A DNA stretch of 64,000 nt from positions 62,001 through 126,000 of the IMG/VR virus record IMGVR_UViG_3300042691_055965; one strand, 5' to 3'. The notes beneath the pieces are model-generated. The model worked only from the letters and a program-made list of their open reading frames with translations, had not been told where the DNA came from and made no database searches. The translations under genes were made by a program, and so were the position numbers. This document shows, piece after piece, positions 25,510 to 53,473 of the stretch. The first letter of the stretch is position 1; the number at the start of each line of letters is the position of its first letter.

Positions 25510-25521
25510 AATTTTTATTTT

Positions 25522-26897: not shown

Positions 26898-26909
26898 TTT
26901 TTTAAAATT

Positions 26910-27491: not shown

Positions 27492-27531
27492 GTTGTAAAC
27501 ATGATTGTTTTTAATTTTTTGTAAACATTAT

Positions 27532-33223: not shown

Positions 33224-34019
33224 GAGGATTAATTAAATTTTTTGTAATATTTTCAAAAAGGTTTTGATTTTTTCTGATTGATTCCATTATATTATGTGAT
33301 TTAGCAAAAAAATTATTTTCACTATAATGCCATTGATGAATTGCAAATGGAGTGTCTTGTATTTTTAATTCTAAACCTAATAGTTTAATTCTATGTAGTA
33401 ACTCATCATCATCAAACCCAATTCCATTAGAAAATCTTTCATCGAACCCCCCTAATTTATCCATATTTTTTTTTGTAATTGCGGACAAAAAATGATAATG
33501 AGCGGGTCTATAAATTGAATGGTTATACCAACAAGACTCACCCTCTCTAACATAATTAATATTATTAAATGGTAGTGATACATTTATAATTTTATCAAAA
33601 ATATCATCATAACTGAAGTCTAAATTTTGTAGTTGTTCTGTTTTGGTTTTGTTTAATGAATAGACCGCATACGTTAAATAGTTTTCATCATTTATATTAT
33701 TTACAATATCATCTAATATGTCCCCAACATGCAAACATTCTGGATTTTGTAAAATTATAATATCTCCGGTTGCTTCATTTATTGATTTATTAAAAGGAAC
33801 GCAAGGATTTGTGTACCATCTTTCTGTTGGTAATACTTTAAGTACTTTTACGAATGGAAAAATTTCGGGGATATCTGTAATATCATGTTCTAATGAAGAG
33901 CAATCGTCTGTAATAATAAACTCTACATTGTCTACGTGTTTTGACTTTTGTATTGTATTTAAAGTATTTATTAATTGTTTTTTTCTATTGTAATATGATG
34001 TTACTATTGAAATTTTCAT
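33213..34019 (-). CDS. Glycosyltransferase family 2 (paralogue of 30097-30906)
   Basis: SIVTSYYNR, TDDCS, NPC..FN, GGFDERF..GIGFDDDE. Confidence 0.88.
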   Translation of the reverse strand: MKISIVTSYYNRKKQLINTLNTIQKSKHVDNVEFIITDDCSSLEHDITDIPEIFPFVKVLKVLPTERWYTNPCVPFNKSINEATGDIIILQNPECLHVGDILDDIVNNINDENYLTYAVYSLNKTKTEQLQNLDFSYDDIFDKIINVSLPFNNINYVREGESCWYNHSIYRPAHYHFLSAITKKNMDKLGGFDERFSNGIGFDDDELLHRIKLLGLELKIQDTPFAIHQWHYSENNFFAKSHNIMESIRKNQNLFENITKNLINPHVN

Positions 34020-36720: not shown

Positions 36721-37319
36721 AACCCAGTACTTCCAAATCCGTTATCGTTTCTGTCTTTTGTTCCCACTTCAGAAAGTTCTACAAAATTAATCCATTTTCC
36801 CGAAATTACAGGACAAAGTACTGCTTGTGCAATTTTTTGTCCTTTGGAAATTTTAATTCTTTCTGATGTGGTATTGAATAAAATTACTTTGATTTCCCCC
36901 AAGTAACCACTATCTACAGTTCCTGGTGAATTTAAAACCATAAGTCCTTGATTAAGGGCTAATCCACTTTTTGAACGAATTTGAATTTCATGTCCATCAG
37001 GAATATCTAACACAAGTCCTGTCGGTATAAGTTTTCTATCATTAGCTTGAATCCAAACTTCTTCCGACGCTCTCAAATCAAAACCTGAATCAGACAAATG
37101 TTCATATTTTGGATTATCAGAATCTGATTTGTTAATGAATCCTAAATCTATTTTATGATTATCCATAGATTGTAAGAACATATTTGAAAGTTCTTCTTCA
37201 GTTATTCCTAATGATTCTAATATTGATTCAGGGTTATCCATATCAAAATCATTCATATTTTCTTGTAAATCCTTAAGTAGTTTAAGGTTTTGTGTTATTT
37301 CATTTAAATCTTCTTGCAT
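36717..37319 (-). CDS. dut: Trimeric dUTPase with an acidic N-terminal extension
   Basis: SGFDL, RSKSGLA, GTVDSGY.GE, KIAQ, R...GFGSTG. Confidence 0.92.
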   Translation of the reverse strand: MQEDLNEITQNLKLLKDLQENMNDFDMDNPESILESLGITEEELSNMFLQSMDNHKIDLGFINKSDSDNPKYEHLSDSGFDLRASEEVWIQANDRKLIPTGLVLDIPDGHEIQIRSKSGLALNQGLMVLNSPGTVDSGYLGEIKVILFNTTSERIKISKGQKIAQAVLCPVISGKWINFVELSEVGTKDRNDNGFGSTGL

Positions 37320-39969: not shown

Positions 39970-40371
39970 TTATGTTATATTTTCTTCATTATTAAATTTT
40001 GCGTTCACTAAAACCCTTGTCATTGATTTGTCACCATTAGGGTTGTAGTTCGGTCTCATTTCATAAAAATTATCCATTGTTGGTGATAATGTAAATATTT
40101 TATCTAATCTGAATAACCTCCATCCTGGTAATATGTTGTTTTCATTTTTTTCGCTATAGGATGCACCCTCACGTTCCCATGCTCTTAAAACTAAATTACC
40201 TTTTTTACTGTAACCCAAGCATACCGGTTCAATGGTTCTTAAACCTTTACCCCCATTATCTTTTCCATCATAATAAATTATTACAAGTTTTTTCTTTTTG
40301 ATACTATCTTGTAAATCATTTATTGATGCAATTTCGTTAATTATATGTTTTAAGTTACCTAAAAGTTTCAC
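39970..40371 (-). CDS. Stand-alone WYL-domain protein
   Basis: IYY...R.IEP..LG......LRAW...GWRLFRLDKI. Confidence 0.8.
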   Translation of the reverse strand: MKLLGNLKHIINEIASINDLQDSIKKKKLVIIYYDGKDNGGKGLRTIEPVCLGYSKKGNLVLRAWEREGASYSEKNENNILPGWRLFRLDKIFTLSPTMDNFYEMRPNYNPNGDKSMTRVLVNAKFNNEENIT

Positions 40372-40662: not shown

Positions 40663-41109
40663 TTATATTATTTTTTTTATCAGTTTATTTATTTTAATTA
40701 CTTCTTCTTTTAAATCATCCACAGTTGTCCCATGTTTATCATTTAAATTAAAACTGTTTTTTTCATGTGAAGAAAGGTGTGTATTTTGCATTCCAGCATC
40801 TTGTTTAGTGTCTTTACTATTTGAATCATTATCCCTCCAAACTCTTAAAACTTCATCACACCAATTTTTCATTCTGTATTTTCCATTCAAAACAAATGGA
40901 GCGTCTTCTTCGTTACCACTATATTCATCAAACCAATTTTTAATTCTTTTAATTTGTTGATAAGTAACGTAACCATTGTCCACCAAATCTTGGTTTCTAT
41001 TGTAACCTTCAGTGTTTGAATCGGCTTCAACAGAATTAAAACAATCCTTTAAATGTTTTATTAAAGAATCAGGTAATTTTGCTTTTCTATCGTAAAGATT
41101 TTTATTCAT
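40663..41109 (-). CDS. Hypothetical protein
   Basis: C-terminal LKEEVIKINKLIK. Confidence 0.6.
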   Translation of the reverse strand: MNKNLYDRKAKLPDSLIKHLKDCFNSVEADSNTEGYNRNQDLVDNGYVTYQQIKRIKNWFDEYSGNEEDAPFVLNGKYRMKNWCDEVLRVWRDNDSNSKDTKQDAGMQNTHLSSHEKNSFNLNDKHGTTVDDLKEEVIKINKLIKKII

Positions 41110-41818
41110 CTTTTAAAAGACTTATTAAGTCATCAATACTAATTCCTTGTTTATCTGCCATATTTTTTAATGCCCTTACATTCTTTTTTAAAATATTACT
41201 ATATTCTTTTTTATGTAATAACTTGTCTTCGGAAATGTCATTAACATCTTTTTCTTTTATTATACCTCTAGTTACAAAATCTTTTTTATTTTTAATTTTT
41301 TTCGAAGCATTTTTTTCAAATTTTAAATCTTTTCCTAATTCTTTTGCTCTATCTTTTGCCTTTTGTTCGTCACCTAATTTTTTTTTATAAAATTTAATTG
41401 TTTCTTTAGCGTCTAAATCTTTTGTCTTTTTATATCCGAATGCTTTTGACATATCTTCCTCTTTTACGTGACCTTCACCGTAATATCCGTACCATCCACG
41501 AAGTAGTGGATCTCTTGGGTTTCTTGACATTGCAACAGTTTTTTCTGTGCTTGTAAAACCTTGAACCGTAGATGCTGGATCTTGAAGTCCAATACTTGAA
41601 GTTAACCATGTACCATCATAATCTACAAGCTCTGTAACTTCACCATCTTCTTCTTTTTTATTATTTTCTTTTTTTGTTTTGGATAAAAATATTTTATGAC
41701 TTTTACAAGGCATAAATTTTTTTCTACCATCGACTTCATGTGAATGATATCCATCACAACCCAAAGTCCTTGCTACTCTTAATGCTCTATCCTTTGTAGA
41801 ATATTTATATGATTTCAT
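41102..41818 (-). CDS. Hypothetical protein with an N-terminal DUF3721-like Cys/His module
   Basis: YST...A...A..LGC.G.H.H......FMPC..H. Confidence 0.55.
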   Translation of the reverse strand: MKSYKYSTKDRALRVARTLGCDGYHSHEVDGRKKFMPCKSHKIFLSKTKKENNKKEEDGEVTELVDYDGTWLTSSIGLQDPASTVQGFTSTEKTVAMSRNPRDPLLRGWYGYYGEGHVKEEDMSKAFGYKKTKDLDAKETIKFYKKKLGDEQKAKDRAKELGKDLKFEKNASKKIKNKKDFVTRGIIKEKDVNDISEDKLLHKKEYSNILKKNVRALKNMADKQGISIDDLISLLKDE

Positions 41819-41870: not shown

Positions 41871-43820
41871 ATGCCAACACAAAATCTGAATTCGTATTAT
41901 TACAAAAAATATAAGGTGTTACTTAATAGTTCAAACTATTTTGATTTGACACTTGCTTCAGATGAAAGGGATTATGATGAAGAAGTGGTGTTTTCAAATG
42001 ATTTGATAGCGTCAAATAACGGAACAATATTACCAATTAAAATTGATTTATCTTCTTCAAATAATAATCCACAAAATGTAATACAATTTGGTGAATATAA
42101 TCAATCAAACACATTAGTATCAAGTAATTTTTACAATCCAAATAATGTAGATTTGAATTGTTATTCAGCATTTACAGGATTATGTGACGTTGGACTTGTT
42201 GGAACCGATAATGGTTTATACACTGGTTTAACGGGACAAACATTATACTATTCTATGGGTATTCGTGATGATTATAAATTCAATCCACATTACCGTGATA
42301 GAAGATTCAAAATGGTTCCCGTAACCGGATACACAAGACAACCAAACGTTGTTTTTTCAGGTAGACCTAAAAATACTATATATAATATTGAGTCAAAGTC
42401 TGCAAGTACCGTAGGATATTATCAAGAACTTTATGGTGGGTTTTATCAAGGATTTTACAAATTGAAAGGTTATGATTATGAAGTTTTTCCCGAAAGAGTC
42501 AACAAAGGTTGGACAATGGAAGCCGTCATCAAACCAAGACAATTTGACGACTATGAAATTGATACTGATACCGAAGAATATTTGAATGATGTTTATCCTG
42601 AAAATGCTGGAACATTTTTTTATTTTGGCGCAAGAGCTGAAAATAAATTTTATCATTATGCAACGGGAACATCAGAAAGTTTTTCAGGTTATAGTAGAAT
42701 AACAAGTGGACTTACTTGTATTGAAACTTGTGCATGTGCAAATTCAGCGGTGACAAATTCAAACTGTTTTGGTGTGTATCCTCAATCAACAACATCTAAA
42801 ACTCATTCAAAAAATTGTGATTGTGGATGTTTAAGTGAAACAATAGACATTACATCAAAACCTTACGATCCTAAAATAGATGTACTATCTAATGCACTAT
42901 CAATTAGATTAAGTGGTTGTGCAGTGAATCCCGTATTGGTTGTAAAATCAATTGTGACAACGGGATCTTGTATCACAACAGGTTCTTGCTCAACTACAGG
43001 ATTAACATATAGTACAGGATACACATTTGATGAATATGTATCATCACCAATCTATGGTACTTGTAATTACAATTGTGATGATAACACTGAAGAAAGATGG
43101 GTTTATGTCAGTGCGGTATTTGAAAGGTATGAATACTTGGAAGATTGCGACTTATTAAATAAAGGTGGAATTAATGATATAAGAAAAGAAACATATCAAT
43201 CTTCTTTGGATGGTATGTCATATAAATTAATAAGTCCTCCTCAAACACATACAGGTGGAACAAAAGAACAAAAAATACATATTATTAATTTTAACAGAAA
43301 ATGGTATGATGAGGTAAGATATAGACTTGGTGATTTAAAAATATTTGTTAACGGTTATCTTTTTATGATAATTCGAAACTTTGAAGAAATAATTCCAAGA
43401 GAATTAAATACCGAAAAAGAAAAACAAATCGGCGTACCATATAATATATCTTTCGGTGGTGGAACACAAGGGTTACATGAAAACTTAATTTTTTCTTCTT
43501 GTACGACACCTTATGGACCTTATATACAAGATCCTGAATTGTTTCCTAACAATATACTTTCAGCAACGACTTTAAGTGGATTAACAACTGATATTTTACT
43601 TGAACAAAATTTTGGTGGAACCTTTATGGGTGGAATTTCACAATTTAGAATGTATACAGAACCATTAGATTTTACACAAATTCAACATAACTACAGAATA
43701 ATTAAGGATAAATATGATTTGATTGACTACTGGTGTTTGGATTGTCTTCCATTAATTTATCTATATACTGATTATCTTTATATTGAACCACAATATTATG
43801 ATCCACAATTTAATCAATAA
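41871..43820 (+). CDS. Virion structural protein (split LamG-like domain, Cys-rich insert)
   Basis: GWTMEAVIKP...LKIFVNG...FMGGISQFRMY..PL; central Cys cluster. Confidence 0.55.
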   Translation: MPTQNLNSYYYKKYKVLLNSSNYFDLTLASDERDYDEEVVFSNDLIASNNGTILPIKIDLSSSNNNPQNVIQFGEYNQSNTLVSSNFYNPNNVDLNCYSAFTGLCDVGLVGTDNGLYTGLTGQTLYYSMGIRDDYKFNPHYRDRRFKMVPVTGYTRQPNVVFSGRPKNTIYNIESKSASTVGYYQELYGGFYQGFYKLKGYDYEVFPERVNKGWTMEAVIKPRQFDDYEIDTDTEEYLNDVYPENAGTFFYFGARAENKFYHYATGTSESFSGYSRITSGLTCIETCACANSAVTNSNCFGVYPQSTTSKTHSKNCDCGCLSETIDITSKPYDPKIDVLSNALSIRLSGCAVNPVLVVKSIVTTGSCITTGSCSTTGLTYSTGYTFDEYVSSPIYGTCNYNCDDNTEERWVYVSAVFERYEYLEDCDLLNKGGINDIRKETYQSSLDGMSYKLISPPQTHTGGTKEQKIHIINFNRKWYDEVRYRLGDLKIFVNGYLFMIIRNFEEIIPRELNTEKEKQIGVPYNISFGGGTQGLHENLIFSSCTTPYGPYIQDPELFPNNILSATTLSGLTTDILLEQNFGGTFMGGISQFRMYTEPLDFTQIQHNYRIIKDKYDLIDYWCLDCLPLIYLYTDYLYIEPQYYDPQFNQ

Positions 43821-43849: not shown

Positions 43850-46800
43850 ATGGCGTTAATAACTAGATCGATAGGACCTGATGCACAAGGATCAAAGTTG
43901 AGTTTTGCACAAATGGATAATAACTTATACTTCTTACAGAGTATCGGTTATACAGGTGGAACTTATGAAAATAATACATTGATTTTGACTAACCCTACGG
44001 GTGGTACTATTGAAACTGTAATCGAATCTTTTACAAGAAACTTCATTCCATCAGGGACATCTATAACAATATATGAAGATTATCAAAATTTAATTTTTGG
44101 TGATTTAGTAGTTCAAGGTGAATTAAATATTGAAAATGGTGCCGAACTAGTTGTGTTGAATGGTGCAATAATAGTAAGTGGAGGAACAATAAATAATTCA
44201 GGATTAACTTATTCAATCACATTACCTGAATATAACACTTTCTTAACTAACGCAACACTCGATTCAAATACAAAAAAATTATCATTTACAGGTAATTTTG
44301 GATTCGTACCGTTTGAAACAGATTTATCATCACTGTCTTTTACAGGTGGTAATGTAAATAACTTATCAACAAACTCATTATCGGCAACTTCAATTACTGC
44401 AAATACAATTGATTTATGTGCAACCAATGGAACCCTTTTTACTGATTCAATATCTGGTTGTTCTCCAATTAATATTTTAAGTTTTTCAAATTTTCATGAA
44501 GGATTAAGTGGGTCGACTATTAGTGGTGAAACTTTTTATTTAAACGGAACAAATATTCAAAATTTATTAGGGGGTGAGTTTTTACCTTTGAGTGGTGGCA
44601 CAGTTACAGGTAACACTATTTTCACTCAAGGAGTTACCGCAAATACTGTTAATAGTTTAAAATTAGGTATTGGTGCTGGAAACATCAATTCAAATATTTC
44701 TATTGGAATTTCTTCACTTCAAAGCAACTCAACTGGTTGTAAAAATATCGCAATTGGAGGTATTTCATTGTATAATAATAATAGTGGTAATTTCAACGTT
44801 GCGATAGGTGATGAATCTATGGTTCAAAACACAACGGGTGGTAGAAATGTTGCTCTTGGTAGAAACACTTTAAGAAATAATGGTTGTGGATACGATAACG
44901 TCGCTATAGGATATAGGGCGTTATATTCGAACACCGATGGAAATACAAATGTGGCGATAGGAAAAAATAATTTATGTTCAAACACAACAGGAAACAACAA
45001 CGTATCATTGGGACAATGTTCTTTATTATCCAATACATCAGGTTATAACAACATTTCATTGGGTAACCAATCTCTTCAATCTAACACTTCCGGTAATAAT
45101 AACATATCACTTGGTACTCAATCACTTGTGAACAATACAACAGGTAGTCGTAATGTGTCTTTAGGATTTTTAGCACTCCAAAACAACACAGGAGGAACGG
45201 GTAATATTGGAATTGGTGAAAGAAGTTTATTAAATAATACACAAGGAAATTATAATGTTGCTGTTGGTAGATTCGCTTTATGTTCAAACACAACAGGAAT
45301 AAATAATTTGGCACTTGGAACTGGTTCTTTATCTAAAAACACAACAGGACAAAACAACGTTGGTTTGGGTACATTATCATTGTATAATAACACAACAGGA
45401 TGTCAAAACGTGTCATTGGGAATATTTTCATTGTATAAAAATACAACCGGTAATAACAACGTGTCGTTGGGTGGAAACTCTATACGATTCAACACTACTG
45501 GTAGTAATAATGTATCATTAGGGTATCAAACACTATTTTGTAACACATCAGGAAGTAACAATGTATCGTTGGGTGCAAATTCACTTTATTCAAATACAAC
45601 AGGAGGTAATAACATATCATTAGGTCAAAGTTCACTCCAATCTAACACAACAGGAGGTAATAACGTATCGTTGGGTACAAGTTCACTTCGATGTAACACC
45701 ACGGGATTTCAAAACGTTGCGTTGGGTAGATTTTCTTTACAATATAACACAACAGGAAATAACAACATAGGTATTGGTTATGCATCATTATGTTGTAATT
45801 TATCAAATGGTAATGTTGGTATTGGTTGGAATACTTTATCTAGAAATACAACGGGAAGTAAGAATTTAGCGGTTGGGTATCAAGCATTGTTTGGTAATAC
45901 TACTGGTGGTTATAATATCGCATTTGGTGATCAAACATTAAGAAATAACACAACGGGAACCCAAAATTTTGGAGTTGGACAGGGTGCTTTACGTAGTAAC
46001 ACAACAGGATTTAGTAACCTTGCAATGGGAAGAACTTCTTTATGTACAAATTCTACAGGATGTTACAATATTGCTATAGGTGATGCTGCCATGTTAGGTA
46101 ATACAACGGGTAGTAATAATGTATCTTTAGGAAAATCATCACTTCGATCAAACACAACCGGTCCGGGTAATGTTGTCATCGGGGCGAATACTTTACAATC
46201 TAACACAACGGGAGGAAGTAATGTTGCTGTTGGATTTTACGCTTTAAGGTGTAATACAACTGCAAGTTTTAATATAGGAATCGGATCACAGGCTTTGTAT
46301 CGTAATACTACGGGTACACCTAATATTGCGATAGGGACAAACGCCCTTCGATGTAACACTACTGGTGGTAATCATATTGCTATAGGTTGTAATGCTCTTT
46401 TGAATAATACAACTTCATATAATAACGTGTCGTTAGGTGTATGTTCATTATTAGCAAACACAACTGGGTCCGGTAATTTTGCGGTAGGGAACACATCCAT
46501 GCGTTGTAATACAATTGGATGTTATAACATTGCATTGGGTACATCTAGTTTATTTAATAACTCAATTGGGAATTTTAATGTTGGTATTGGTAGATTACCT
46601 CTCTTTTCCAACACTACCGGTTCTAACAATGTGGCATTAGGATATAATCCTCTACGGTTCAACACAACCGGATCTAACAACGTATCGTTGGGTACAAGTT
46701 CACTCCAATCTAACACAACGGGCGGTAACAACATATCATTAGGATATAGATCGTTATTGTTGAATACAACCGGAGTTAACAACGTATCTTTGGGTGGAAG

Positions 46801-48220
46801 TTCACTTTGTTCAAACACAACAGGAATTTACAACATATCGTTGGGTTGTAATTCACTACGATTTAATACAACGGGATGTCACAATGTATCTTTAGGTTAT
46901 GCTTCTTTATGTTGTAATACAACAGGAAATAACAACGTGTCGTTGGGTAGGTGTTCTTTAGGAAGGAACACGACAGGATGTAATAATGTTGCTATAGGAT
47001 GTAGCACTTTAGGATCGAATACATATGGATTGAACAACGTCTCAATAGGTTCATATTCACTCGGATTAAACACTACGGGATGTCATAATATTGGTATTGG
47101 GTATCGTTCTTTATACTGCAACACTATTGGATGTGATAACGTTTCGTTGGGTCAAAGTTCACTTCGTTCAAACACGACAGGTAATAACAACGTATCTTTA
47201 GGATTAAATTCTCTTCGTGATAACACTACTGGAAATCAAAATGTAGCAATCGGTAGAAGTTCTTTGTTCAAAAATGTTTCAGGTTGTGACAATGTTGCAT
47301 TAGGTTATAAATCACTTTATTCTAACACTGGAGGAATCTATAATACAGCAATAGGTAGATTAACATTGAACTCAAATGTTACGGGTAATAATAATGTTGC
47401 TATTGGAATCGCATCTCTATTTTCAAACACAACAGGAAGTAACAACGTATCAATAGGACCGGCAGCTTTGAGTACAAACACAATTGGTAATCATAACCTT
47501 GCCTTCGGTTACAATTCGTTACTTCAAAATTTAACAGGTTGTAATAATATATCCTTGGGTAAAAATTCTTTGAAGTATAATTCAAGTGCAGATAATAATA
47601 TTGCAATTGGTGAAAAATCACTCTATGGTGTTAATGGATATAGTGTTGGTGGTAGCAATATTGCTTTAGGAAAACAATCACTACAATCAAATACATTAGG
47701 TGTCAATAACATTGCTTTGGGTACAAATTCACTTCAATGTAACGCTAGCGGTTCTTACAATTTATCTTTGGGTACTCTTTCACTACAAAATAATCTCCAA
47801 GGTTCACACAATATTTCTATAGGTGTATCTTCTCTTCAATATAATACCTATGGTAATAGTAATTTATCCATAGGTTATCAGTCACTTACACAAAATACTA
47901 CAGGATGTTACAATATATCGTTAAGTCAAGGTTCTCTACTTAACAACACAACAGGATGTAATAACATTGCAATTGGTTTGAGTAGTTCTTGTAGTAATGT
48001 CACAGGTTCAACAAATGTTGCCATAGGTTGTCTAACACAAACCGGTAATTTTTCTAACTCTGTAATTTTAGGTGCTGGCGCAACCGCAAGTGCAAATAAT
48101 GAATTTGTTGTTGGTAGTGTAGGGACACCATTAGGGACAATTACAACCGAAGCGTGTACATCAAGTAAAACTTGGCAAATTAGGGTAAATGGTAATTTGT
48201 ATAAATTACTATTGGCTTAA
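43850..48220 (+). CDS. Long tail fibre/adhesin with 17-aa beta-solenoid repeats
   Basis: N-terminal LITR...GSKLSF.QMDNNL anchor; YadA-head-like NTTGxNNVxLGxxSLxx repeats; late motif at 43827-43834. Confidence 0.8.
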   Translation: MALITRSIGPDAQGSKLSFAQMDNNLYFLQSIGYTGGTYENNTLILTNPTGGTIETVIESFTRNFIPSGTSITIYEDYQNLIFGDLVVQGELNIENGAELVVLNGAIIVSGGTINNSGLTYSITLPEYNTFLTNATLDSNTKKLSFTGNFGFVPFETDLSSLSFTGGNVNNLSTNSLSATSITANTIDLCATNGTLFTDSISGCSPINILSFSNFHEGLSGSTISGETFYLNGTNIQNLLGGEFLPLSGGTVTGNTIFTQGVTANTVNSLKLGIGAGNINSNISIGISSLQSNSTGCKNIAIGGISLYNNNSGNFNVAIGDESMVQNTTGGRNVALGRNTLRNNGCGYDNVAIGYRALYSNTDGNTNVAIGKNNLCSNTTGNNNVSLGQCSLLSNTSGYNNISLGNQSLQSNTSGNNNISLGTQSLVNNTTGSRNVSLGFLALQNNTGGTGNIGIGERSLLNNTQGNYNVAVGRFALCSNTTGINNLALGTGSLSKNTTGQNNVGLGTLSLYNNTTGCQNVSLGIFSLYKNTTGNNNVSLGGNSIRFNTTGSNNVSLGYQTLFCNTSGSNNVSLGANSLYSNTTGGNNISLGQSSLQSNTTGGNNVSLGTSSLRCNTTGFQNVALGRFSLQYNTTGNNNIGIGYASLCCNLSNGNVGIGWNTLSRNTTGSKNLAVGYQALFGNTTGGYNIAFGDQTLRNNTTGTQNFGVGQGALRSNTTGFSNLAMGRTSLCTNSTGCYNIAIGDAAMLGNTTGSNNVSLGKSSLRSNTTGPGNVVIGANTLQSNTTGGSNVAVGFYALRCNTTASFNIGIGSQALYRNTTGTPNIAIGTNALRCNTTGGNHIAIGCNALLNNTTSYNNVSLGVCSLLANTTGSGNFAVGNTSMRCNTIGCYNIALGTSSLFNNSIGNFNVGIGRLPLFSNTTGSNNVALGYNPLRFNTTGSNNVSLGTSSLQSNTTGGNNISLGYRSLLLNTTGVNNVSLGGSSLCSNTTGIYNISLGCNSLRFNTTGCHNVSLGYASLCCNTTGNNNVSLGRCSLGRNTTGCNNVAIGCSTLGSNTYGLNNVSIGSYSLGLNTTGCHNIGIGYRSLYCNTIGCDNVSLGQSSLRSNTTGNNNVSLGLNSLRDNTTGNQNVAIGRSSLFKNVSGCDNVALGYKSLYSNTGGIYNTAIGRLTLNSNVTGNNNVAIGIASLFSNTTGSNNVSIGPAALSTNTIGNHNLAFGYNSLLQNLTGCNNISLGKNSLKYNSSADNNIAIGEKSLYGVNGYSVGGSNIALGKQSLQSNTLGVNNIALGTNSLQCNASGSYNLSLGTLSLQNNLQGSHNISIGVSSLQYNTYGNSNLSIGYQSLTQNTTGCYNISLSQGSLLNNTTGCNNIAIGLSSSCSNVTGSTNVAIGCLTQTGNFSNSVILGAGATASANNEFVVGSVGTPLGTITTEACTSSKTWQIRVNGNLYKLLLA
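44690..48080 (+). repeat. About 65 degenerate 51-bp (17-aa) tandem repeats
   Basis: Consensus NTTGxNN(V/I)(S/A)(L/I)GxxSLxx; boundaries approximate. Confidence 0.9.
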
Positions 48221-48258
48221 TTTTCTTTACACTTATTTTCTTTTATAAACTTAATTCA

Positions 48259-49080
48259 ATGGTACAAAAGATTTTTTTTAATACTTCACTCCCAAGAGCG
48301 GGTTCAACATTAATACAAAATATATTAATGCAAAATCCTGATATATATTCAACTCCTACATCAGGAATAATAGAATTATTATCAACCGCCAGAACAATTT
48401 ACACAAATAACGACGCTTTCAAGGCTCAAGATCCCGAAACCATGAAATTAGGATTCAAAAACTTTTGTTTAAAAGGTTTATATGGTTTTTATAATGGAGT
48501 AACTGACAGACCTTATGTAATAGAAAAAAGTAGAGGATGGCTCGGGTATCAAGATTTTGTAGAATTTTTTATGGGAGAAAAACCAAAAATGATTTGTATG
48601 GTTCGTGATTTAAGAGGAATATTTGCATCTATGGAAAAAAACTTCAGAAAAAATCCTGACAAAGATGCTAATATTATTAACACTATTGAGTTAAAAAACA
48701 TGACAACTACGTCTAGAATCGATCATTTTTCGGTTGCACCTCCAATCGGGCCTTCATTAGAATGGTTATCAGAAACTTTTCAAAGAGGACAAAACAATGA
48801 TATTTTATTTATACGTTTTGAAGATTTGACAACTGACCCCGAAACTGAAGTCAAAAAAATTTATAATTATTTAAAACTCCCACACTTCAATCACGATTTC
48901 AACAATGTTCAACAATTGACACATGAAAATGATGTTATTCACGGTATTTTTGGAGATCACAAAATTAAACCTAAAGTAGAACCAATTAAAAATGATTATG
49001 TCGAAATTTTAGGACAAGAAAATTGTGATAGATTGAAACAACATTATGATTGGTATTTTAGAATATTTAACTATATATAA
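48259..49080 (+). CDS. PAPS-dependent sulfotransferase
   Basis: 5'-PSB loop SLPRAGSTL; EKSR.W; 3'-PB VRD....AS; IRFEDL..DP. Confidence 0.88.
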   Translation: MVQKIFFNTSLPRAGSTLIQNILMQNPDIYSTPTSGIIELLSTARTIYTNNDAFKAQDPETMKLGFKNFCLKGLYGFYNGVTDRPYVIEKSRGWLGYQDFVEFFMGEKPKMICMVRDLRGIFASMEKNFRKNPDKDANIINTIELKNMTTTSRIDHFSVAPPIGPSLEWLSETFQRGQNNDILFIRFEDLTTDPETEVKKIYNYLKLPHFNHDFNNVQQLTHENDVIHGIFGDHKIKPKVEPIKNDYVEILGQENCDRLKQHYDWYFRIFNYI

Positions 49081-49107
49081 TAAAATAAAACATAAAAAAA
49101 TAAAAAA

Positions 49108-49350
49108 ATGAAAGAAGAATTAACACAAGAACAAATCCAAAGTAGTATTTTAGCAGCATTTGATTCTGTTAACTTAATAAACAATTTGTTGACAACAGAA
49201 AAAAATGAGGAAAATAAAAACACAGTAAAACGTAATTTTGAACATTTAGAAGTTATGATGAGTAAAGATTGGTTTTCTGAAGCATTATCTACAGAACAAA
49301 AAAACGATATTGATTTATCAATAGAAAACGGTAAATTATTTATTTCATAA
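49108..49350 (+). CDS. Small helical protein, possible fibre chaperone or accessory
   Basis: AAFDSVNLIN...RN.EHLE.M..KDW; located next to the fibre gene. Confidence 0.5.
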   Translation: MKEELTQEQIQSSILAAFDSVNLINNLLTTEKNEENKNTVKRNFEHLEVMMSKDWFSEALSTEQKNDIDLSIENGKLFIS

Positions 49351-49372
49351 TTTAACTTCTTACATTTTTCTT

Positions 49373-50251
49373 ATGGAAGAAAAATATTTAGTTTGGCATA
49401 TAGAAGGTGGTTTAGGAAAAAATATAGCAGCAACAGCATTATTAAAATCACTTAAAGAAAAATACAACGACAGAAAAATAGTTGTTGTCGCGTCATACCC
49501 TGAAATATTTTTAAATTTACCTTCTGTTTACAGAGTTTATAAGTTAGGTTCTACACAGTATTTTTATGACGATTATATCAAAGATAAAGATACCTTAGTG
49601 TTCAAACACGAACCGTATTACGAAACTCAACATATTTTGAAACAAAAACATTTGATTTCAAATTGGTGTAAAATAATGGGAATTGATTATAATTTTCAAT
49701 TACCAATTTTGAATTTTAATTTCATACAACAAAGAAATGTTTTAAATTGGGAAAGAAACAAACCTATACTTGTTATACAAACTAATGGTGGATTTTTACA
49801 AAGTAATCAACCATATTCATGGACAAGAGATTTACCATATAGTATTGCTTTACAAATAGTTGAAAAATACAAAGATTCACACCATATTGTGCAAGTTTGT
49901 AAACCAAGATCAATGAAGTTGCCTGACTGTGAAATAGTCGAACATCAAATTTCTTCTATGGAACTTTTCGGATTACTAATAGCGAGTGATAAAAGAATAC
50001 TTATTGATTCTTGTTTACAACATGCTGCTGCGGCTTTAAATCTACCTTCTACCGTTTTTTGGATTGGAACATCACCTGAAAACTTTGGTTATTCTTTACA
50101 TAACAATATTGTGGCAAAAAAACCATCAGGTACTACTAAATTAATTGATGCTTACTTATTTGATTATTCATTTGAAGGTATAAGCCACGAATGTCCATAC
50201 TATAGTTTGGATGAAATGTTTGATATCGAAAATGTTTTAGAATCCATATAA
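49373..50251 (+). CDS. GT9-like (heptosyltransferase-fold) glycosyltransferase
   Basis: GGLGKNI..T; IDSCLQHAAAAL..PSTV.W....P..FGY. Confidence 0.8.
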   Translation: MEEKYLVWHIEGGLGKNIAATALLKSLKEKYNDRKIVVVASYPEIFLNLPSVYRVYKLGSTQYFYDDYIKDKDTLVFKHEPYYETQHILKQKHLISNWCKIMGIDYNFQLPILNFNFIQQRNVLNWERNKPILVIQTNGGFLQSNQPYSWTRDLPYSIALQIVEKYKDSHHIVQVCKPRSMKLPDCEIVEHQISSMELFGLLIASDKRILIDSCLQHAAAALNLPSTVFWIGTSPENFGYSLHNNIVAKKPSGTTKLIDAYLFDYSFEGISHECPYYSLDEMFDIENVLESI

Positions 50252-50353: not shown

Positions 50354-53300
50354 ATGGGAAAATTAATTTTAAGAAATAACGGTTTTGAAACTCAATTTAT
50401 AAATGGACTATCTTTTTCGGGGTTGTCCGCTCAAACTAACACCTATTTTTTAGGATTCGATCCGTTCACTAATAATTTAGAAGGATTAGATCCGAGTGGT
50501 AATACAATAAATTTTGAAGGCGGTGGTACAACATTTACAGGAGGTACAGTAAGTGGTGAAACATTCTTTCCTTCAGGTTTAACTGCATCAACTATTTCCG
50601 CAACAACATATCAAAATTTACCTTGTAATTCTGAATCTGTAACCTATTCTGAATTAGTTGATAATATAACGGGTGGGACTCTTTGTGAAGGAAAATATTA
50701 TTTAATAACAGATTACCAAACTTGTTACGATCAACCTGATTTTGATTATAATGGTAGCCCTATAACAACAGGTAATTACAAACAAGGTCCTGTTGAACCT
50801 ATTTTAGTTTTAGCAACAAGTGCAAACACAATCAGTGAGATTGCTTATCAACCATCTTACCCTAAAGATAGAATATTATATGACTGGACTTGGAATACAA
50901 CTGAGGTTACTGGTGGAGTTGCTTTTGGTAGAATCACTGAAAGAATTGATGAGTTTAATAACAGAACTGATTATGACCACAGAAATGTTTTATTTAAAAG
51001 ATATAAATTATATACTATTAGACCTGGACAACAATTAAATGGTTCAATAGAACTACAATCCGATGGTACTGTACTTGGTACAAATACATACTTTACGGGT
51101 TTAACTGTTGGTGATATAATTTATATGGATGGAAATTCTTTGTTCTACGAAATTACAGGAATTACCGATAATACTACTATGAATGTTTCGGGTGATACTA
51201 TATCATCGTTTGGATGTTGTTCATCTTTCTATAAGGCAATAGAAGAAACAAACGGAACGGGATACTTCAGTTTCAAACAAACAAATGTATATAGTGATGA
51301 TTTTGCTGAATACACAACTTTTGGTGATGCACTTTCAAACAGTTATGCAAAAAATAATTACATAGGAAATTATGCAAACAACTATCAAAATGCAGGTTCA
51401 GGAACTTTCTTATTATCTAACAATGTATTTTTAGAAGGTCAATACGAAAGTAATAAATTTGGTGATTATTGTTATAATAATACTTTTGGTACTGATAACC
51501 AAAACAACGTTTGGGGGGACTATTGTTATGAAAACGTATCAACAAATGATATTGATGATAATTTCATCGGTCATTATTTTTATAGAAATTTATTAAATGT
51601 CAATCTAATAAACAATCAGATTGGTAACTATTTTTATAATAATCAATTATTAGCGGAAAATAATGATTCTTTTGATAGTAACATTATTGGTAATAATTTC
51701 AATAACAATACCATTTACTCTTGGTTTTATAAAAATGAAATATTAGACGAATTTAATAATAATACTATCGGAGACTTTGGTAACTTGACTGACTTCGAAT
51801 TTTATAGGAATTATATCAGAAATAACTTCAATAATAATACTATACGACAAACATTCCAAAATAATCAAATAGGTACAAACTATCAAAATAACACAATTAA
51901 TGGAGAATTTGTTGGTAATACAATATTAAATGGATTTAATAATAACACAGTAGGTGCATATTTCAATCTTAACGAAATTGGAAACGGATTTAATCAAAAC
52001 GTAGTAAACGACAGTTTTTATCAAAATTCAACAAAATATTATTTTCGTAGTAATCGAGTGAGTAACTCCTTTTTTTCTAACAATATTGGTGAGTACTTCG
52101 AAAGTAATAAACCGTCCAATTTCACTCTTTCAAGTTGGTTTGATTTGAGTACTGTAACATCAAGAACTTTTGACGTTTTCAATCAAGTTGTAGGTGGAGG
52201 ACAAATAGGACGTAAAGTATTAGGCAAAGAACTTGTTATGCAAGTTGTACCAACTTCACAATATTTTAAAATTAAAATTACCCAATGGACACAAAACGGT
52301 AATGGTGGTGGGTTTCAGTGGGAAAGAACTGAAATAGATTCATCAGGAAATAATATCGGTCCAACAATTTATTTTACTAAAACAAATAATGGTTCTGAAG
52401 TGGATGTGATAGTCCCTGGGGTTGTTGAAATCACTAGAAGTAATCAAAATGGTATCTATAACACTGTTACAGAAGTATCTTGGAATGGAGGTATATCACC
52501 AAGTGGGACAACATGGAATTCAATATATACACAACCAAATAACGGTGAAAGATTTGCATATAACAAAATTGGTAACAATTTTTACAACAACATAATTGGA
52601 AACGATTTTGGTTTTGGTGGTGGTACACCTTATGGTAATGTAATTTTAGATCGTTTTGAGTTCAACGAAGTTGGGGCGTTTATGTACAATAATAACATAG
52701 GTAATTATTATACAAATAATTTAGTTGGTGATTATTTTGAAAACAACACAATTAAAAATTATTTTATAGGAAACACAATTGGTGATGGATTTGAAAGTAA
52801 TACAATTGGTGACTATTTTGGACAAAATGGAGGTAACATTCAAAACACAATTATTAATGATTTCAAATTTAACAAGATAGGAAATTATTTTGGTAACGAT
52901 GGAACAAATACTGACGGAGGAAATGTAATCAATAACGGTTTTCAAAACAATACAATCGGGGATAATTTTTACTTCAACGCATGTGATGAAAATTTTTCTA
53001 ACAACGTAATAGGTAATTCATTTATTTTTAATACTATCCTGACTGGATTTTCAGACAACCAAATCGGCAACGTTTATGTTACAAACGATTTAGGTAATAA
53101 TTTTTCAAGTAACAAAATCGGAAATTATTTTGCATTTTCAACTATTGGAAATAGTTTTCAAAAAAATGTGGTAGGTGATTTTTTTGGAAATGCAAATGGC
53201 GATAACCAAATTGGTGATGATTTTACAAACAATCAAATTGGAAATAATTTTGGTAATGATGGTACAAACAATTTCGGAGGAAATACCGTTGGTAGTGGAT

Positions 53301-53473
53301 TTACTAAAAATATAATTACATCGACACAAGTATATGGTTATGACTTTACTATGTCTACTTATGTATATGATAGTAACATGAACAAAAACATTTTCGATAG
53401 ACAAGACGGAACACCAAGATTATCATATTATGATAATTCAGATGTATTAAATATAACAAATATAGATAATTAA
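50354..53473 (+). CDS. Tail spike/fibre with an Asn-rich beta-helix
   Basis: GKYYLITDYQT, G.I..R.D..NN..DYD.RN..F.R, ~10-aa FxNNxIGxx repeats; late motif at 50333-50340. Confidence 0.72.
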   Translation: MGKLILRNNGFETQFINGLSFSGLSAQTNTYFLGFDPFTNNLEGLDPSGNTINFEGGGTTFTGGTVSGETFFPSGLTASTISATTYQNLPCNSESVTYSELVDNITGGTLCEGKYYLITDYQTCYDQPDFDYNGSPITTGNYKQGPVEPILVLATSANTISEIAYQPSYPKDRILYDWTWNTTEVTGGVAFGRITERIDEFNNRTDYDHRNVLFKRYKLYTIRPGQQLNGSIELQSDGTVLGTNTYFTGLTVGDIIYMDGNSLFYEITGITDNTTMNVSGDTISSFGCCSSFYKAIEETNGTGYFSFKQTNVYSDDFAEYTTFGDALSNSYAKNNYIGNYANNYQNAGSGTFLLSNNVFLEGQYESNKFGDYCYNNTFGTDNQNNVWGDYCYENVSTNDIDDNFIGHYFYRNLLNVNLINNQIGNYFYNNQLLAENNDSFDSNIIGNNFNNNTIYSWFYKNEILDEFNNNTIGDFGNLTDFEFYRNYIRNNFNNNTIRQTFQNNQIGTNYQNNTINGEFVGNTILNGFNNNTVGAYFNLNEIGNGFNQNVVNDSFYQNSTKYYFRSNRVSNSFFSNNIGEYFESNKPSNFTLSSWFDLSTVTSRTFDVFNQVVGGGQIGRKVLGKELVMQVVPTSQYFKIKITQWTQNGNGGGFQWERTEIDSSGNNIGPTIYFTKTNNGSEVDVIVPGVVEITRSNQNGIYNTVTEVSWNGGISPSGTTWNSIYTQPNNGERFAYNKIGNNFYNNIIGNDFGFGGGTPYGNVILDRFEFNEVGAFMYNNNIGNYYTNNLVGDYFENNTIKNYFIGNTIGDGFESNTIGDYFGQNGGNIQNTIINDFKFNKIGNYFGNDGTNTDGGNVINNGFQNNTIGDNFYFNACDENFSNNVIGNSFIFNTILTGFSDNQIGNVYVTNDLGNNFSSNKIGNYFAFSTIGNSFQKNVVGDFFGNANGDNQIGDDFTNNQIGNNFGNDGTNNFGGNTVGSGFTKNIITSTQVYGYDFTMSTYVYDSNMNKNIFDRQDGTPRLSYYDNSDVLNITNIDN

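What the first reader, a model, noticed from the sequence alone, without database searches (positions are those of the whole stretch)
43850..50251. Tail fibre plus sulfotransferase plus GT9-like module: a dedicated sulfated-glycan fibre modification unit
A 1456-aa fibre with about 65 repeats is followed immediately by a PAPS sulfotransferase, a small helical protein and a GT9-like transferase, inserted among structural genes about 9 kb from the main GT locus. Most repeats contain N-T-T/N-x-S (N-x-S/T sequons, as used by cytoplasmic HMW1C-type enzymes on adhesins). Cys is scattered over the variable positions (GCYN, LCSN, LCCN, GCNA), giving candidate N-, O- or S-linked acceptor sites in a regular array. 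A sulfated glyco-fibre could mimic the sulfated polysaccharides that Bacteroidota bind through SusC/D systems, luring the host (speculative).
Basis: partly seen in the sequence, partly recalled or inferred. Interest (0 to 1): 0.75.

Follow-up and report, generated by a model that had tools for sequence, protein, structure and literature searches.

The report
Phage repeat fibre with glycosyl-sulfation cassette
A freshwater giant phage encodes a very long tail fibre made of 66 near-identical 17-residue turns, followed by a sulfotransferase and a heptosyltransferase-like enzyme; the same gene trio recurs in dozens of aquatic phages, so the enzymes probably decorate the fibre, though this is not proven.

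Summary
ORF 43850-48220 encodes a 1456-aa fibre with 65-66 repeats of 17 aa (N-V-[SA]-L-G-x-x-S-L-x-x-N-T-T-G-x-N), 96 N-x-S/T sequons and 39 Cys at variable positions. Three co-directional genes follow after gaps of 22-38 bp. They are a PAPS-type sulfotransferase with intact motifs, an 80-aa helical protein, and a 292-aa protein. That protein has no Pfam hit, but its model matches GT9 heptosyltransferases and the autotransporter heptosyltransferases TibC/Aah.

The GT9-like gene lies within 3 kb of a sulfotransferase in 28 of 36 distinct viral loci. A 17-aa-repeat fibre lies beside it in most loci with enough flank, including cultured Pelagibacter phages HTVC111P and HTVC112P. In fibre-anchored loci, Cys-rich fibres had the GT9-like gene nearby (7/7) and Cys-poor ones did not (0/12).

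The N-T-T sequon is equally conserved in fibres that lack the enzyme, so it is structural. No HMW1C-type enzyme is present. The host is unknown, so the SusC/D lure idea has no support.

Best reading: a TibC/AIDA-I-like fibre glycosylation unit with added sulfation. The acceptor, the donor and the modification itself remain untested.

The parts
43850..48220 (+). Tail-fibre or adhesin protein, 1456 aa. It has an N-terminal non-repeat part (residues 1-281), 65-66 repeats of 17 aa (residues 282-1405) and a conserved C-terminal ~50 aa.
   Evidence: PHROG 23837, 4636 and 6002 (virion structural / tail spike) at E = 7e-229 to 6e-182. Repeat parsing. The model of 15 repeats is a solenoid with one strand set per 17 aa, pLDDT 68. 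The C-terminal 56 aa are conserved at 49-89% directly upstream of the sulfotransferase in about 20 loci.
44693..48064 (+). The 17-aa repeat array itself (residues 282-1405), carrying 36 Cys at variable positions and the N-T-T / N-V-S sequons.
   Evidence: TRF finds period 51 nt at 66-77% matches.
48259..49080 (+). PAPS-type sulfotransferase, 273 aa, cytoplasmic (no hydrophobic segment).
   Evidence: Pfam PF13469 E = 4.6e-14 and PF00685 E = 5.5e-13. phrog_27463 E = 7e-45. The 5'-PSB loop P12-R13-x-G-S16-T17 and the 3'-PB pair R116...S124 are at least 93% conserved across 31 homologues. Atlas places it in a viral sulfotransferase cluster. Maximum 19-aa Kyte-Doolittle hydrophobicity is 0.65.
49108..49350 (+). 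Small helical protein (80 aa) of unknown role. It is conserved between the sulfotransferase and the GT9-like gene in the closer relatives.
   Evidence: No Pfam or PHROG family. Homologues at 43-73% identity sit at the same position in about 25 loci. Atlas finds only viral hypothetical proteins.
49373..50251 (+). Divergent GT-B glycosyltransferase with a GT9 / autotransporter-heptosyltransferase-like fold ('gt9l'), 292 aa.
   Evidence: The model has pLDDT 88 and pTM 0.88. Foldseek against PDB: 3tov, 1psw (WaaF), 2h1h (WaaC) and 4rb4/4rap (TibC), E = 6e-10 to 1e-6. In Swiss-Prot models the first 16 hits are LPS/LOS heptosyltransferases (15 named as such plus the putative glycosyltransferase HI_0523), followed by BimC, Aah and TibC. 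hhalign matches the GT9 C-terminal D-S-x-L-x-H-x-A-A-A-L motif. No Pfam hit. phrog_8954 E = 1e-7.
41871..43820 (+). Upstream co-directional 649-aa protein of unknown family, 2.8% Cys with a Cys cluster. Possibly a fibre or adhesin component; membership in the unit is uncertain.
   Evidence: No Pfam or PHROG hit. A homologue (about 50% identity) keeps this position in L014/L015. Sequence.
50354..53473 (+). Downstream co-directional 1039-aa protein with short Asn-rich repeats; probably a second fibre. Membership in the unit is uncertain.
   Evidence: No family hit. Its N-terminal ~90 aa resemble the N-termini of fibre proteins in L014 and L032. Repeats are visible. Cys content is 0.77%.

Best explanation
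The region is a tail-fibre gene followed by its own modification cassette.

The fibre is a long beta-solenoid of 66 turns of 17 residues. The conserved positions (N1, G5, L9, N12-T-T-G15) build the turn. Positions 6, 7, 10, 11, 16 and 17 vary, are presumably exposed, and carry scattered Cys.

The three genes downstream are read with the fibre gene. The 292-aa GT-B enzyme resembles the GT9 heptosyltransferases. It works like the autotransporter heptosyltransferases TibC/Aah, which sit next to the gene of a repeat beta-helix adhesin and load many sugars onto its repeats in the cytoplasm. The sulfotransferase then transfers sulfate from PAPS, either onto those sugars or directly onto fibre side chains. 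The result would be a negatively charged, glycan-coated fibre.

Shown here:
- the identity of the parts;
- their operon-like arrangement;
- the conservation of the fibre / sulfotransferase / GT9-like linkage across very different phage backbones;
- the statistical link between the enzyme and Cys-bearing repeats.

Inferred:
- that the fibre is the substrate;
- the order of the two reactions;
- the donor sugar;
- the acceptor residue (Ser/Thr by analogy with TibC, or Cys by association).
For: Parts.

Arrangement: same strand, gaps of 22-38 bp, no + strand terminator.

Linkage:
- Of 36 distinct gt9l loci other than the window's own copy, 28 have the sulfotransferase within 3 kb.
- Of 20 loci with at least 6 kb of upstream flank, 16 have a fibre of 8 or more repeats within 8 kb (gene maps).
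- The conserved fibre C-terminus lies directly upstream of the sulfotransferase in about 20 loci.
- The pair travels between backbones. It is found in 31-kb podoviruses HTVC111P and HTVC112P, where the fibre's last base is the GT gene's first (gp52 ends and gp53 starts at 26997; gp53 is a homologue, hhalign 99.4%, E = 3e-21). It is also found in a 149-kb Kyanoviridae-classed marine virus and in jumbo-phage contigs of 130-304 kb.
- The family is essentially phage-only. It has 3694 clusters in metagenomes and appears on 3 MAG contigs among one genome each of 185,579 bacterial and archaeal species.

Relatives add matching chemistry inside the cassette. Some carry an APS-kinase-like gene (PF01583, E = 2e-15; TIGR00455, E = 7e-18), an adenylyltransferase and DUF2061. 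Others carry GT2-like, GT4 and FkbM methyltransferase genes.

Cys link:
- In loci found through the fibre alone, 7 of 7 distinct Cys-rich fibres (at least 2% Cys) with enough flank had gt9l, and 0 of 12 Cys-poor fibres (below 1%) did. Fisher p = 2e-5, or 3e-4 if two doubtful loci are counted against the link.
- In cultured or complete genomes, gt9l-positive fibres have 1.5-3.0% Cys, and the four sampled fibres from genomes without a gt9l match (Venkman, CRP-1, SPO1, P-SSM2) have 0.2-1.1%.

Precedent: TibC is a WaaC-like GT-B enzyme that heptosylates Ser in the repeats of TibA and AIDA-I (PMC4358343).
Against: - No direct evidence of any modification exists.
- Pfam GT9 does not hit the protein.
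- The residue aligned with the GT9 catalytic Asp (WaaC D13) is an invariant Lys, so the chemistry may differ or be lost.
- The complex prediction of gt9l with six repeats gave no answer.
- Some gt9l genes sit beside Cys-poor or other proteins: a 1778-aa collagen-like protein with no Cys in L040, and fibres with 1.2% Cys in L049 and L052. Some loci show no repeat fibre in the flank (L009, L010, L020, L053).
- The association test is not corrected for shared ancestry or habitat.
- The window's genome record lacks PAPS-synthesis genes, though it is only 76% complete.
- More distant sulfotransferase relatives in cyanophages sit among sugar genes, not fibres.
Confidence: 0.5

Rival explanations
1. 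The enzymes act on the host envelope rather than on the fibre. A GT9-like transferase and a sulfotransferase would alter LPS core or capsule during infection, for example to mask the receptor so that progeny or competitors do not adsorb to infected cells or debris. The genes would sit next to the fibre only because both belong to the host-range module.
For: All the closest structural relatives are LPS/LOS core heptosyltransferases. Both enzymes are cytoplasmic, as LPS core enzymes are. Some gt9l plus sulfotransferase pairs have no repeat fibre in the flank (L009, L010; L011 has only an 11-anchor, 1.7%-Cys protein on the opposite strand). Distant cyanophage sulfotransferases lie among glycan genes.
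Against: It does not explain why Cys-bearing repeats track the enzyme. It does not explain why a 31-kb lytic podovirus keeps the gene abutting its fibre gene. The family is almost absent from cellular genomes. The GT9 catalytic Asp used on LPS acceptors is replaced.
Confidence: 0.2
2. The fibre is the target, but the sulfotransferase acts directly on fibre side chains (Tyr or Ser/Thr O-sulfation) and independently of the GT9-like enzyme, so there is no sulfated glycan. This rival concerns only the sulfation step and is compatible with fibre glycosylation.
For: Sulfotransferase homologues lie beside fibres without a gt9l gene next to them. L067 has two copies after two Cys-poor fibres. AG-345-L05 has copies interleaved with large proteins 10 kb from gt9l. 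A divergent gt9l clade sits beside Cys-rich fibres with no sulfotransferase (L054-L056), so the two enzymes can be uncoupled. The nearest solved relative, StaL, sulfates a phenol on a peptide scaffold (E = 0.011, weak). Tyr is common at variable positions.
Against: The two genes are adjacent or within 3 kb in 28 of 36 loci. GT4, GT2-like and FkbM genes join the cassette in one clade, which suggests a built-up glycan. The L067 contig ends 0.75 kb after the last gene, so gt9l may simply be cut off.
Confidence: 0.2
3. The cassette works with the large GT locus at 24.7-36.7 kb on another product, such as glycans on the capsid or decoration proteins, a free polysaccharide or a small molecule. Proximity to the fibre would then be incidental.
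For: The window holds about ten further sugar and GT genes, plus a Hoc-like decoration protein next to the major head gene. Mycobacteriophages glycosylate capsid and tail-tube proteins (Freeman et al. 2023, as cited in PMC12619734).
Against: The GT locus is on the other strand, 7 kb away. It is not part of the conserved neighbourhood in relatives, whereas the fibre is. Small pelagiphages have the fibre plus GT pair without any such locus.
Confidence: 0.1
4. The GT9-like protein has lost catalysis and serves as a fibre assembly chaperone or virion component, as many genes directly downstream of fibre genes do.
For: It occupies the position immediately after the fibre gene in pelagiphages. Lys stands at the place of the GT9 catalytic Asp. 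Swiss-Prot already lists an 'inactive autotransporter heptosyltransferase', BimC, among the structural matches.
Against: The donor-binding motif D212-S213-x-x-Q216-H217-A-A-A and 34 other residues are invariant down to 35% identity, which is typical of an active site. It is constantly paired with a sulfotransferase that has intact PAPS motifs.
Confidence: 0.08

Closest known systems
TibC/TibA and Aah/AIDA-I (bacterial autotransporter heptosyltransferases, BAHT) of E. coli
   Same: A WaaC-like GT-B enzyme is encoded next to a long adhesin built of short imperfect beta-helix repeats, which it hyper-glycosylates in the cytoplasm (PMC4358343). TibC, Aah, BimC and BAHTCr are structural matches of the window's enzyme (E = 2e-7 to 7e-6).
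   Different: - The window's enzyme is 292 aa, not about 400.
- It lacks the N-terminal ~90 residues; hits align from TibC residue 94.
- It has no invariant Cys for an iron finger.
- Lys stands where GT9 has its catalytic Asp.
- The substrate candidate is a phage fibre with a 17-aa repeat, not a 19-aa autotransporter repeat.
- A sulfotransferase is added.
- The sugar and the acceptor are unknown.
LPS core heptosyltransferases WaaC, WaaF, WaaQ (CAZy GT9, Pfam PF01075)
   Same: They are the best fold matches (TM 0.55-0.69). They share the C-terminal D-[ST]-G/C-L-x-H-x-A-A-A-L-x-x-P motif and the W-x-R/K-x-P region.
   Different: There is no Pfam PF01075 hit. Identity is about 12-15%. The protein is shorter. 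D13 of WaaC aligns with the invariant K16. The family is found in phages, not in LPS loci.
Pelagibacter phages HTVC111P gp52-gp53 and HTVC112P gp48-gp49
   Same: A 17-aa-repeat tail fibre (1.5-1.9% Cys, at the same repeat positions) is followed directly by a homologue of the GT9-like enzyme.
   Different: These are 31-32 kb podoviruses of marine SAR11. They have no sulfotransferase and no small helical protein. The gene is annotated only as 'putative glycosyl transferase', with no function proposed.
Mycobacteriophage virion glycosylation (Freeman et al. 2023, cited in PMC12619734)
   Same: Phage-encoded glycosyltransferases modify the phage's own structural proteins.
   Different: There the targets are the C-termini of capsid and tail-tube subunits, the GT families differ, and there are no repeat fibre and no sulfation.
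   Same: It is a cytoplasmic enzyme that modifies many sites on a large adhesin encoded nearby.
   Different: The enzyme family is different (GT41, not GT9-like). The N-x-S/T motif here is a structural part of the repeat and is equally present in fibres without any such enzyme.

Membership tests
CAZy GT9 / Pfam PF01075 heptosyltransferases | Significant match to the family profile (PF01075) | tested here: not met
   hmmscan against Pfam-A gives no GT family even at E = 10. A profile of 25 homologues finds no PDB chain by sequence.
CAZy GT9 / Pfam PF01075 heptosyltransferases | GT-B two-Rossmann fold, closest to GT9 members | tested here: met
   The model has pLDDT 88. The top PDB hits are 3tov, 1psw, 2h1h and 6dfe (E = 6e-10 to 5e-8, TMq 0.54-0.69). 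In Swiss-Prot models the first 16 hits are 15 LPS/LOS heptosyltransferases plus the putative glycosyltransferase HI_0523.
CAZy GT9 / Pfam PF01075 heptosyltransferases | C-terminal donor-binding motif D-[ST]-G-x-x-H-[LV]-A-A-A | tested here: met
   hhalign aligns gt9l 199-253 with WaaC 248-302 (E = 1.5e-3) and gt9l 200-236 with WaaF 257-293 (E = 1.5e-4). D212, S213, Q216 and H217 are invariant. The scores are weak.
CAZy GT9 / Pfam PF01075 heptosyltransferases | Catalytic Asp in the loop after strand 1 (WaaC D13; its role is taken from the literature) | tested here: not met
   MAFFT aligns WaaC S-M-G-D13 and WaaF W-V-G-D with gt9l G-L-G-K16. K16 is invariant in 25 homologues and in HTVC111P gp53. 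The alignment of the N-lobe is of moderate reliability.
CAZy GT9 / Pfam PF01075 heptosyltransferases | ADP-heptose as donor | not testable with these tools
   This needs an enzyme assay. No heptose-synthesis genes were identified. An adenylyltransferase in relatives' cassettes is unassigned.
BAHT (TibC/Aah) protein heptosyltransferases | Catalytic core structurally like TibC | tested here: met
   4rb4 and 4rap chains at E = 2e-7 to 1e-5, TMq 0.54-0.66. Aah, TibC, BAHTCr and BimC models at E = 2e-6 to 8e-6. GT9 LPS enzymes score better.
BAHT (TibC/Aah) protein heptosyltransferases | Iron-finger (four Cys) and beta-hairpin thumb for dodecamer assembly; length about 400 aa | tested here: not met
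   The protein is 292 aa. Hits align from TibC residue 94 onward. No Cys is invariant in the family. The features are as described in PMC4358343.
BAHT (TibC/Aah) protein heptosyltransferases | Encoded beside a repeat beta-helix adhesin that is its substrate | tested here: inconclusive
   The adjacency is met and conserved. The substrate relation is untested, and the complex prediction gave no answer.
PAPS-dependent sulfotransferases (Pfam PF13469 / PF00685) | Profile match above the curated threshold | tested here: met
   PF13469 scores 53.6 bits (cut-off 27). PF00685 scores 49.4 bits (cut-off 22).
PAPS-dependent sulfotransferases (Pfam PF13469 / PF00685) | 5'-phosphosulfate-binding loop (P-[KR]-x-G-[ST]-T) and 3'-phosphate-binding R...S | tested here: met
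   P12-R13-A-G-S16-T17 and R116...S124 are at least 93% conserved in 31 homologues. The motif definitions come from established knowledge of the family.
PAPS-dependent sulfotransferases (Pfam PF13469 / PF00685) | Acceptor class (carbohydrate, Tyr or small molecule) | not testable with these tools
   There is only a weak match to StaL (E = 0.011) and an N-terminal match to NoeE.
17-aa-repeat phage tail fibres (PHROG 23837 / 4636 / 6002) | Profile match and N-x-[AS]-[IL]-G-x-x-[AS]-L-x-x-N-T-T-G-x-x repeat | tested here: met
   E = 7e-229 to 6e-182. The same repeat occurs in annotated tail fibres of HTVC111P, Venkman, CRP-1, SPO1 gp2.52 and P-SSM2. No solved structure was found by sequence or by fold.
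HMW1C-type N-glycosylation system (GT41 plus N-x-S/T adhesin) | GT41 enzyme, and sequons that go with the enzyme | tested here: not met
   The enzyme is GT9-like, not GT41. N-T-T frequency is the same in fibres with and without the enzyme.

The most novel reading that the evidence does not exclude
The GT9-like enzyme is an S-glycosyltransferase. It would attach sugars to the single, unpaired Cys scattered over the exposed positions of the fibre repeats, with the invariant Lys at the usual catalytic-Asp site serving a thiolate acceptor. The sulfotransferase would then sulfate these sugars, giving a glycosidase-resistant, polyanionic S-linked glycan coat on a phage fibre.

The evidence does not exclude this:
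- Cys occurs only at variable positions;
- Cys shows no pairing pattern expected of disulfide ladders;
- Cys tracks the presence of the enzyme.

However, counter-examples exist (L040, L049, L052), and shared ancestry could produce the association.
Probability: 0.12. Interest if true: 0.85.

Novelty: new variant of a known kind. Interest (0 to 1): 0.6.

Why it matters
If the cassette does decorate the fibre, it would be the first case of a phage receptor-binding fibre that is hyper-glycosylated by a dedicated TibC-like enzyme and also sulfated. That would extend virion glycosylation, so far known from the capsid and tail tube of mycobacteriophages, to the host-recognition organ.

The family is abundant: 3694 clusters in metagenomes. 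It occurs in phages of SAR11, the most abundant marine bacteria, so it could affect adsorption, host range, stickiness to particles and virion decay in lakes and oceans.

It also gives a testable function to two widespread 'unknown' PHROG families (8954 and 27463). And it provides a compact GT-B enzyme that may recognise a simple 17-residue repeat.

Tried and rejected
- Megablast of the region against GenBank phages: no match.
- Sequence searches of gt9l against Pfam, NCBIfam and PDB: nothing. Only the fold search worked.
- Fold and sequence searches for the fibre repeat: only weak solenoid look-alikes (LRR, HK620 tailspike; E > 0.01) and no PDB relative. The side-chain orientation of the Cys therefore could not be established.
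- Disulfide-ladder idea: tested on 1835 repeats from 43 Cys-rich fibres. Cys pairs within a repeat or between neighbouring repeats occur at 0.3-1.6 times expectation, mostly below 1, so paired Cys are not the pattern. Rejected as the main explanation of the Cys.
- N-glycosylation at N-T-T: rejected as evidence, because the motif is equally conserved without the enzyme.
- PAPS-synthesis genes in the window's genome: none found in the 229-kb record.
- gt9l in one genome each of 185,579 bacterial and archaeal species: only three MAG contigs.
- Complex prediction of gt9l with six repeats: no answer, so it is not evidence either way.
- The 80-aa protein: no informative relative.
- Cyanophage sulfotransferase neighbourhoods: not next to fibres, so they neither help nor contradict.
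- Literature searches for heptosyltransferase or sulfotransferase together with tail fibre: nothing relevant. The 'moraphage' paper (PMC12619734) may concern a related aquatic jumbo-phage lineage, but membership was not tested.
- Host: not determined. The runs that hold the locus are lake or freshwater metagenomes, plus runs whose record reads 'fungus metagenome'.

Full report
**1. Setting.**
The window is bases 62001-126000 of a 229-kb IMG/VR virus record with a CheckV completeness of 76%. The record is low in G+C, about 29-33% around the locus. Besides runs whose record reads 'fungus metagenome', the sequencing runs that hold this locus are lake and freshwater metagenomes. The window encodes:
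- a major head protein (1614-3425), a protease and a Hoc-like decoration protein;
- a 12-kb minus-strand block of sugar-nucleotide and glycosyltransferase genes at 24691-36720;
- dUTPase, an exonuclease and a WYL-domain protein;
- the region of the finding;
- a family B DNA polymerase and a helicase.

It is a jumbo tailed phage. The host is unknown.

**2.
They lie on the same strand, are separated by 38, 27 and 22 bp, and have no terminator-like site between them.

The 1456-aa protein matches three PHROG families of virion structural or tail-spike proteins at E = 7e-229 to 6e-182. Residues 282-1405 form 65-66 repeats with a strict 17-residue period. Sixty-one of 64 spacings are exactly 17, and autocorrelation at lag 17 is 0.49. 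The consensus is N-V-[SA]-L-G-x-x-S-L-x-x-N-T-T-G-x-N. At the DNA level the 51-nt units are only 66-77% alike, so the array is old.

There are 96 N-x-S/T sequons, 51 from N-T-T at positions 12-14 and 28 from N-V-S at positions 1-3. There are 39 Cys, 2.68% against 1.07% for the phage's proteome (binomial p = 4e-7). Thirty-six of them lie in the repeats, at variable positions 6, 7, 10, 11 and 16.

A model of 15 repeats gives one set of short strands per 17 residues, a solenoid, at modest confidence (pLDDT 68). It has no solved relative by fold or by sequence.

**3. The three downstream genes.**

*The 273-aa protein* is a PAPS-type sulfotransferase. It scores above the Pfam thresholds for PF13469 and PF00685. 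The 5'-phosphosulfate loop (P-R-A-G-S-T) and the 3'-phosphate R...S pair are conserved in 31 homologues. It belongs to a large viral cluster and has no hydrophobic segment.

*The 80-aa protein* is helical and has no informative relative.

*The 292-aa protein* ('gt9l') has no Pfam, NCBIfam or PDB sequence match. A model built on 25 homologues has pLDDT 88. Its best structural matches are the following:
- the Veillonella GT9 protein, WaaF and WaaC (E = 6e-10 to 5e-8);
- then TibC;
- among Swiss-Prot models, the first 16 hits are LPS/LOS heptosyltransferases (15 named as such plus the putative glycosyltransferase HI_0523), followed by BimC, BAHTCr, Aah and TibC.

Profile comparison recovers the GT9 C-terminal donor motif (D-S-C-L-Q-H-A-A-A-A-L-N-L-P), aligned to WaaF 257-293 and WaaC 248-302. 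In a MAFFT alignment the catalytic Asp of WaaC (S-M-G-D13) falls on an invariant Lys (G-L-G-K16). So 'GT9-like' is right for fold and donor site. The protein fails the family profile and one catalytic hallmark. It is best described as a divergent, phage-specific branch, with 3694 clusters in metagenomes and only three MAG contigs among one genome each of 185,579 bacterial and archaeal species.

**4.
Forty-five viral loci encode gt9l, 36 of them distinct from the window's own copy.
- The sulfotransferase lies within 3 kb in 28 of the 36.
- Of 20 loci with at least 6 kb of upstream flank, 16 have a repeat fibre within 8 kb.
- The usual order is fibre, sulfotransferase, small protein, gt9l.
- The last 56 residues of the fibre are conserved right before the sulfotransferase in about 20 loci.

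Relatives insert further genes that fit the chemistry. One group adds an APS-kinase-like protein (PF01583, E = 2e-15), a small adenylyltransferase and a DUF2061 protein between the small protein and gt9l. Another clade adds a LamG protein, GT2-like and GT4 transferases and an FkbM methyltransferase between fibre and sulfotransferase. The window's genome record has none of these.

The pair also crosses phage types:
- In the cultured 31-kb Pelagibacter podoviruses HTVC111P and HTVC112P, the 17-aa-repeat tail fibre is followed, with the fibre's last base doubling as the next gene's first, by a gt9l homologue (hhalign 99.4%, E = 3e-21; GG-x-GK and IDSCL-x-H are conserved). The authors list it only as a glycosyltransferase.
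- A 149-kb marine virus has a 2491-aa fibre with 3.0% Cys, two sulfotransferases interleaved with large proteins, and gt9l.

**5. Cysteine.**
In loci retrieved through the fibre alone, fibres fall into two classes, at least 2% Cys or below 1%.
- All seven distinct Cys-rich fibres with enough flank had gt9l nearby.
- None of twelve Cys-poor fibres did. Fisher p = 2e-5, or 3e-4 if L069 and the truncated L072 are counted against the link.
- In cultured or complete genomes the trend holds. HTVC111P has 1.5%, HTVC112P 1.9% and AG-345-L05 3.0%, against Venkman 0.7%, CRP-1 0.2%, SPO1 0.4% and P-SSM2 1.1%.

Across 43 Cys-rich fibres (1835 repeats), Cys sits only at positions 6, 7, 10, 11, 16 and 17 (5-18% each). 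It never sits at the conserved positions. Cys pairs within or between adjacent repeats are not enriched (0.3-1.6 times expectation), so a disulfide ladder is not the pattern.

Caveats:
- The test is not corrected for shared ancestry or habitat.
- Some gt9l genes sit next to Cys-poor proteins: L040 has a collagen-like protein with no Cys, and L049 and L052 have fibres with 1.2%.

**6. What the evidence does not support.**
- The N-T-T motif is equally frequent in fibres with and without the enzyme (N 81 vs 79%, T 76 vs 82%, T 59 vs 64%). It is therefore part of the fold, not a signature of N-glycosylation.
- The enzyme is not of the HMW1C (GT41) type.
- Ser at position 3 (N-V-S) is a peculiarity of this fibre and not of the enzyme-linked class.
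- Nothing bears on a SusC/D 'lure'. The host is unknown, and the cultured carriers of the pair infect SAR11.

**7. Most likely mechanism.**
The closest working model is the TibC/TibA and Aah/AIDA-I system. There, a WaaC-like GT-B enzyme encoded next to a repeat beta-helix adhesin adds heptose to many Ser residues of the repeats in the cytoplasm (PMC4358343). Here a shorter enzyme of the same fold class would load sugars onto the fibre repeats before or during assembly. The sulfotransferase would add sulfate to the sugars, or directly to the protein.

The parts, their arrangement and their conserved linkage are shown. The substrate, donor, acceptor and order of reactions are inferred. A complex prediction gave no answer.

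Rival readings cannot be excluded from sequence:
- modification of the host envelope;
- direct protein sulfation without a sulfated glycan;
- cooperation with the distant GT locus on another target;
- a non-catalytic chaperone.

**8. Novelty.**
No paper in the searched library links a heptosyltransferase-like enzyme or a sulfotransferase with a phage tail fibre. Both enzymes fall in PHROG families of unknown function. Protein glycosylation of repeat adhesins by dedicated GT9-like enzymes is known, and so is virion glycosylation in phages. This is therefore a new variant of a known kind. It is widespread in aquatic phages and testable in a cultured pelagiphage.

The most novel reading not excluded is S-linked glycosylation of the scattered Cys.

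Noticed in passing
window 24691-36720 (- strand): A large block of sugar-nucleotide and glycosyltransferase genes: RmlD-like, NAD-dependent epimerase, two GT4, three GT2, a GT32-like DXD transferase, UDP-GlcNAc 2-epimerase and a GT2_5+GT4 fusion. A dUTPase follows at 36717-37319. Its target is unknown, and it is not part of the conserved fibre cassette in relatives.
   Followed up: partly
window 50354-53473: The 1039-aa protein right after the GT9-like gene has a different short Asn-rich repeat (N-N-x-I-G-N-x-F). Its N-terminal ~90 aa resemble the N-termini of fibre proteins in L014 and L032. It is probably a second fibre, and it is Cys-poor at 0.77%.
   Followed up: partly
window 41871-43820; also 8554-10545 and 12745-14760: Other unannotated proteins with high Cys content. 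p649 has 2.8% with a dense Cys cluster in its middle. The 663-aa ORF has 3.8% and the 671-aa ORF has 5.4%, against a proteome mean of 1.07%.
   Followed up: no
L022:8733-10016 (and many related loci): Relatives carry three extra genes between the small protein and gt9l: an APS-kinase-like protein (145 aa), an adenylyltransferase-family protein (134 aa) and a DUF2061 protein (154 aa). This may be a phage-borne sulfate-activation (PAPS) route, or the adenylyltransferase may make an ADP-sugar. These genes are absent from the window's 229-kb record.
   Followed up: partly
L048:6096-9036 (also L036, L041, L046): In another clade the cassette holds LamG-like, GT2-like, GT4 and FkbM-methyltransferase genes between the fibre and the sulfotransferase. 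This suggests a longer, methylated and sulfated glycan.
   Followed up: no
L058:1327-1734 (Pelagibacter phage HTVC111P gp50): A HlyC-like 'toxin-activating lysine-acyltransferase' is encoded directly upstream of the tail protein gp51 and the fibre gp52. This hints at a second kind of tail-protein modification (acylation) in the same phage.
   Followed up: no
L015:18743-20453: The related 130-kb contig (identical over this locus to one of 304 kb) has a second gt9l-sulfotransferase pair about 8 kb downstream of the first, so the pair behaves as a duplicable unit.
   Followed up: no
L040:807-6143; L080:2711-10550: Collagen-like proteins occupy the fibre position next to gt9l-sulfotransferase cassettes. 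One is 1778 aa with 29% Gly and no Cys; the others have G-x-S triplet runs. These are counter-examples to a strict Cys link.
   Followed up: no
L067:2746-9217: Two sulfotransferase copies follow two Cys-poor 17-aa-repeat fibres, with an unknown 260-aa gene between them and no gt9l in the 3.7 kb available. The contig ends there.
   Followed up: partly
window 39970-40371 and 41102-41818 (- strand): A WYL-domain protein and a DUF3721-containing protein lie just upstream of the fibre cluster, on the opposite strand.
   Followed up: no
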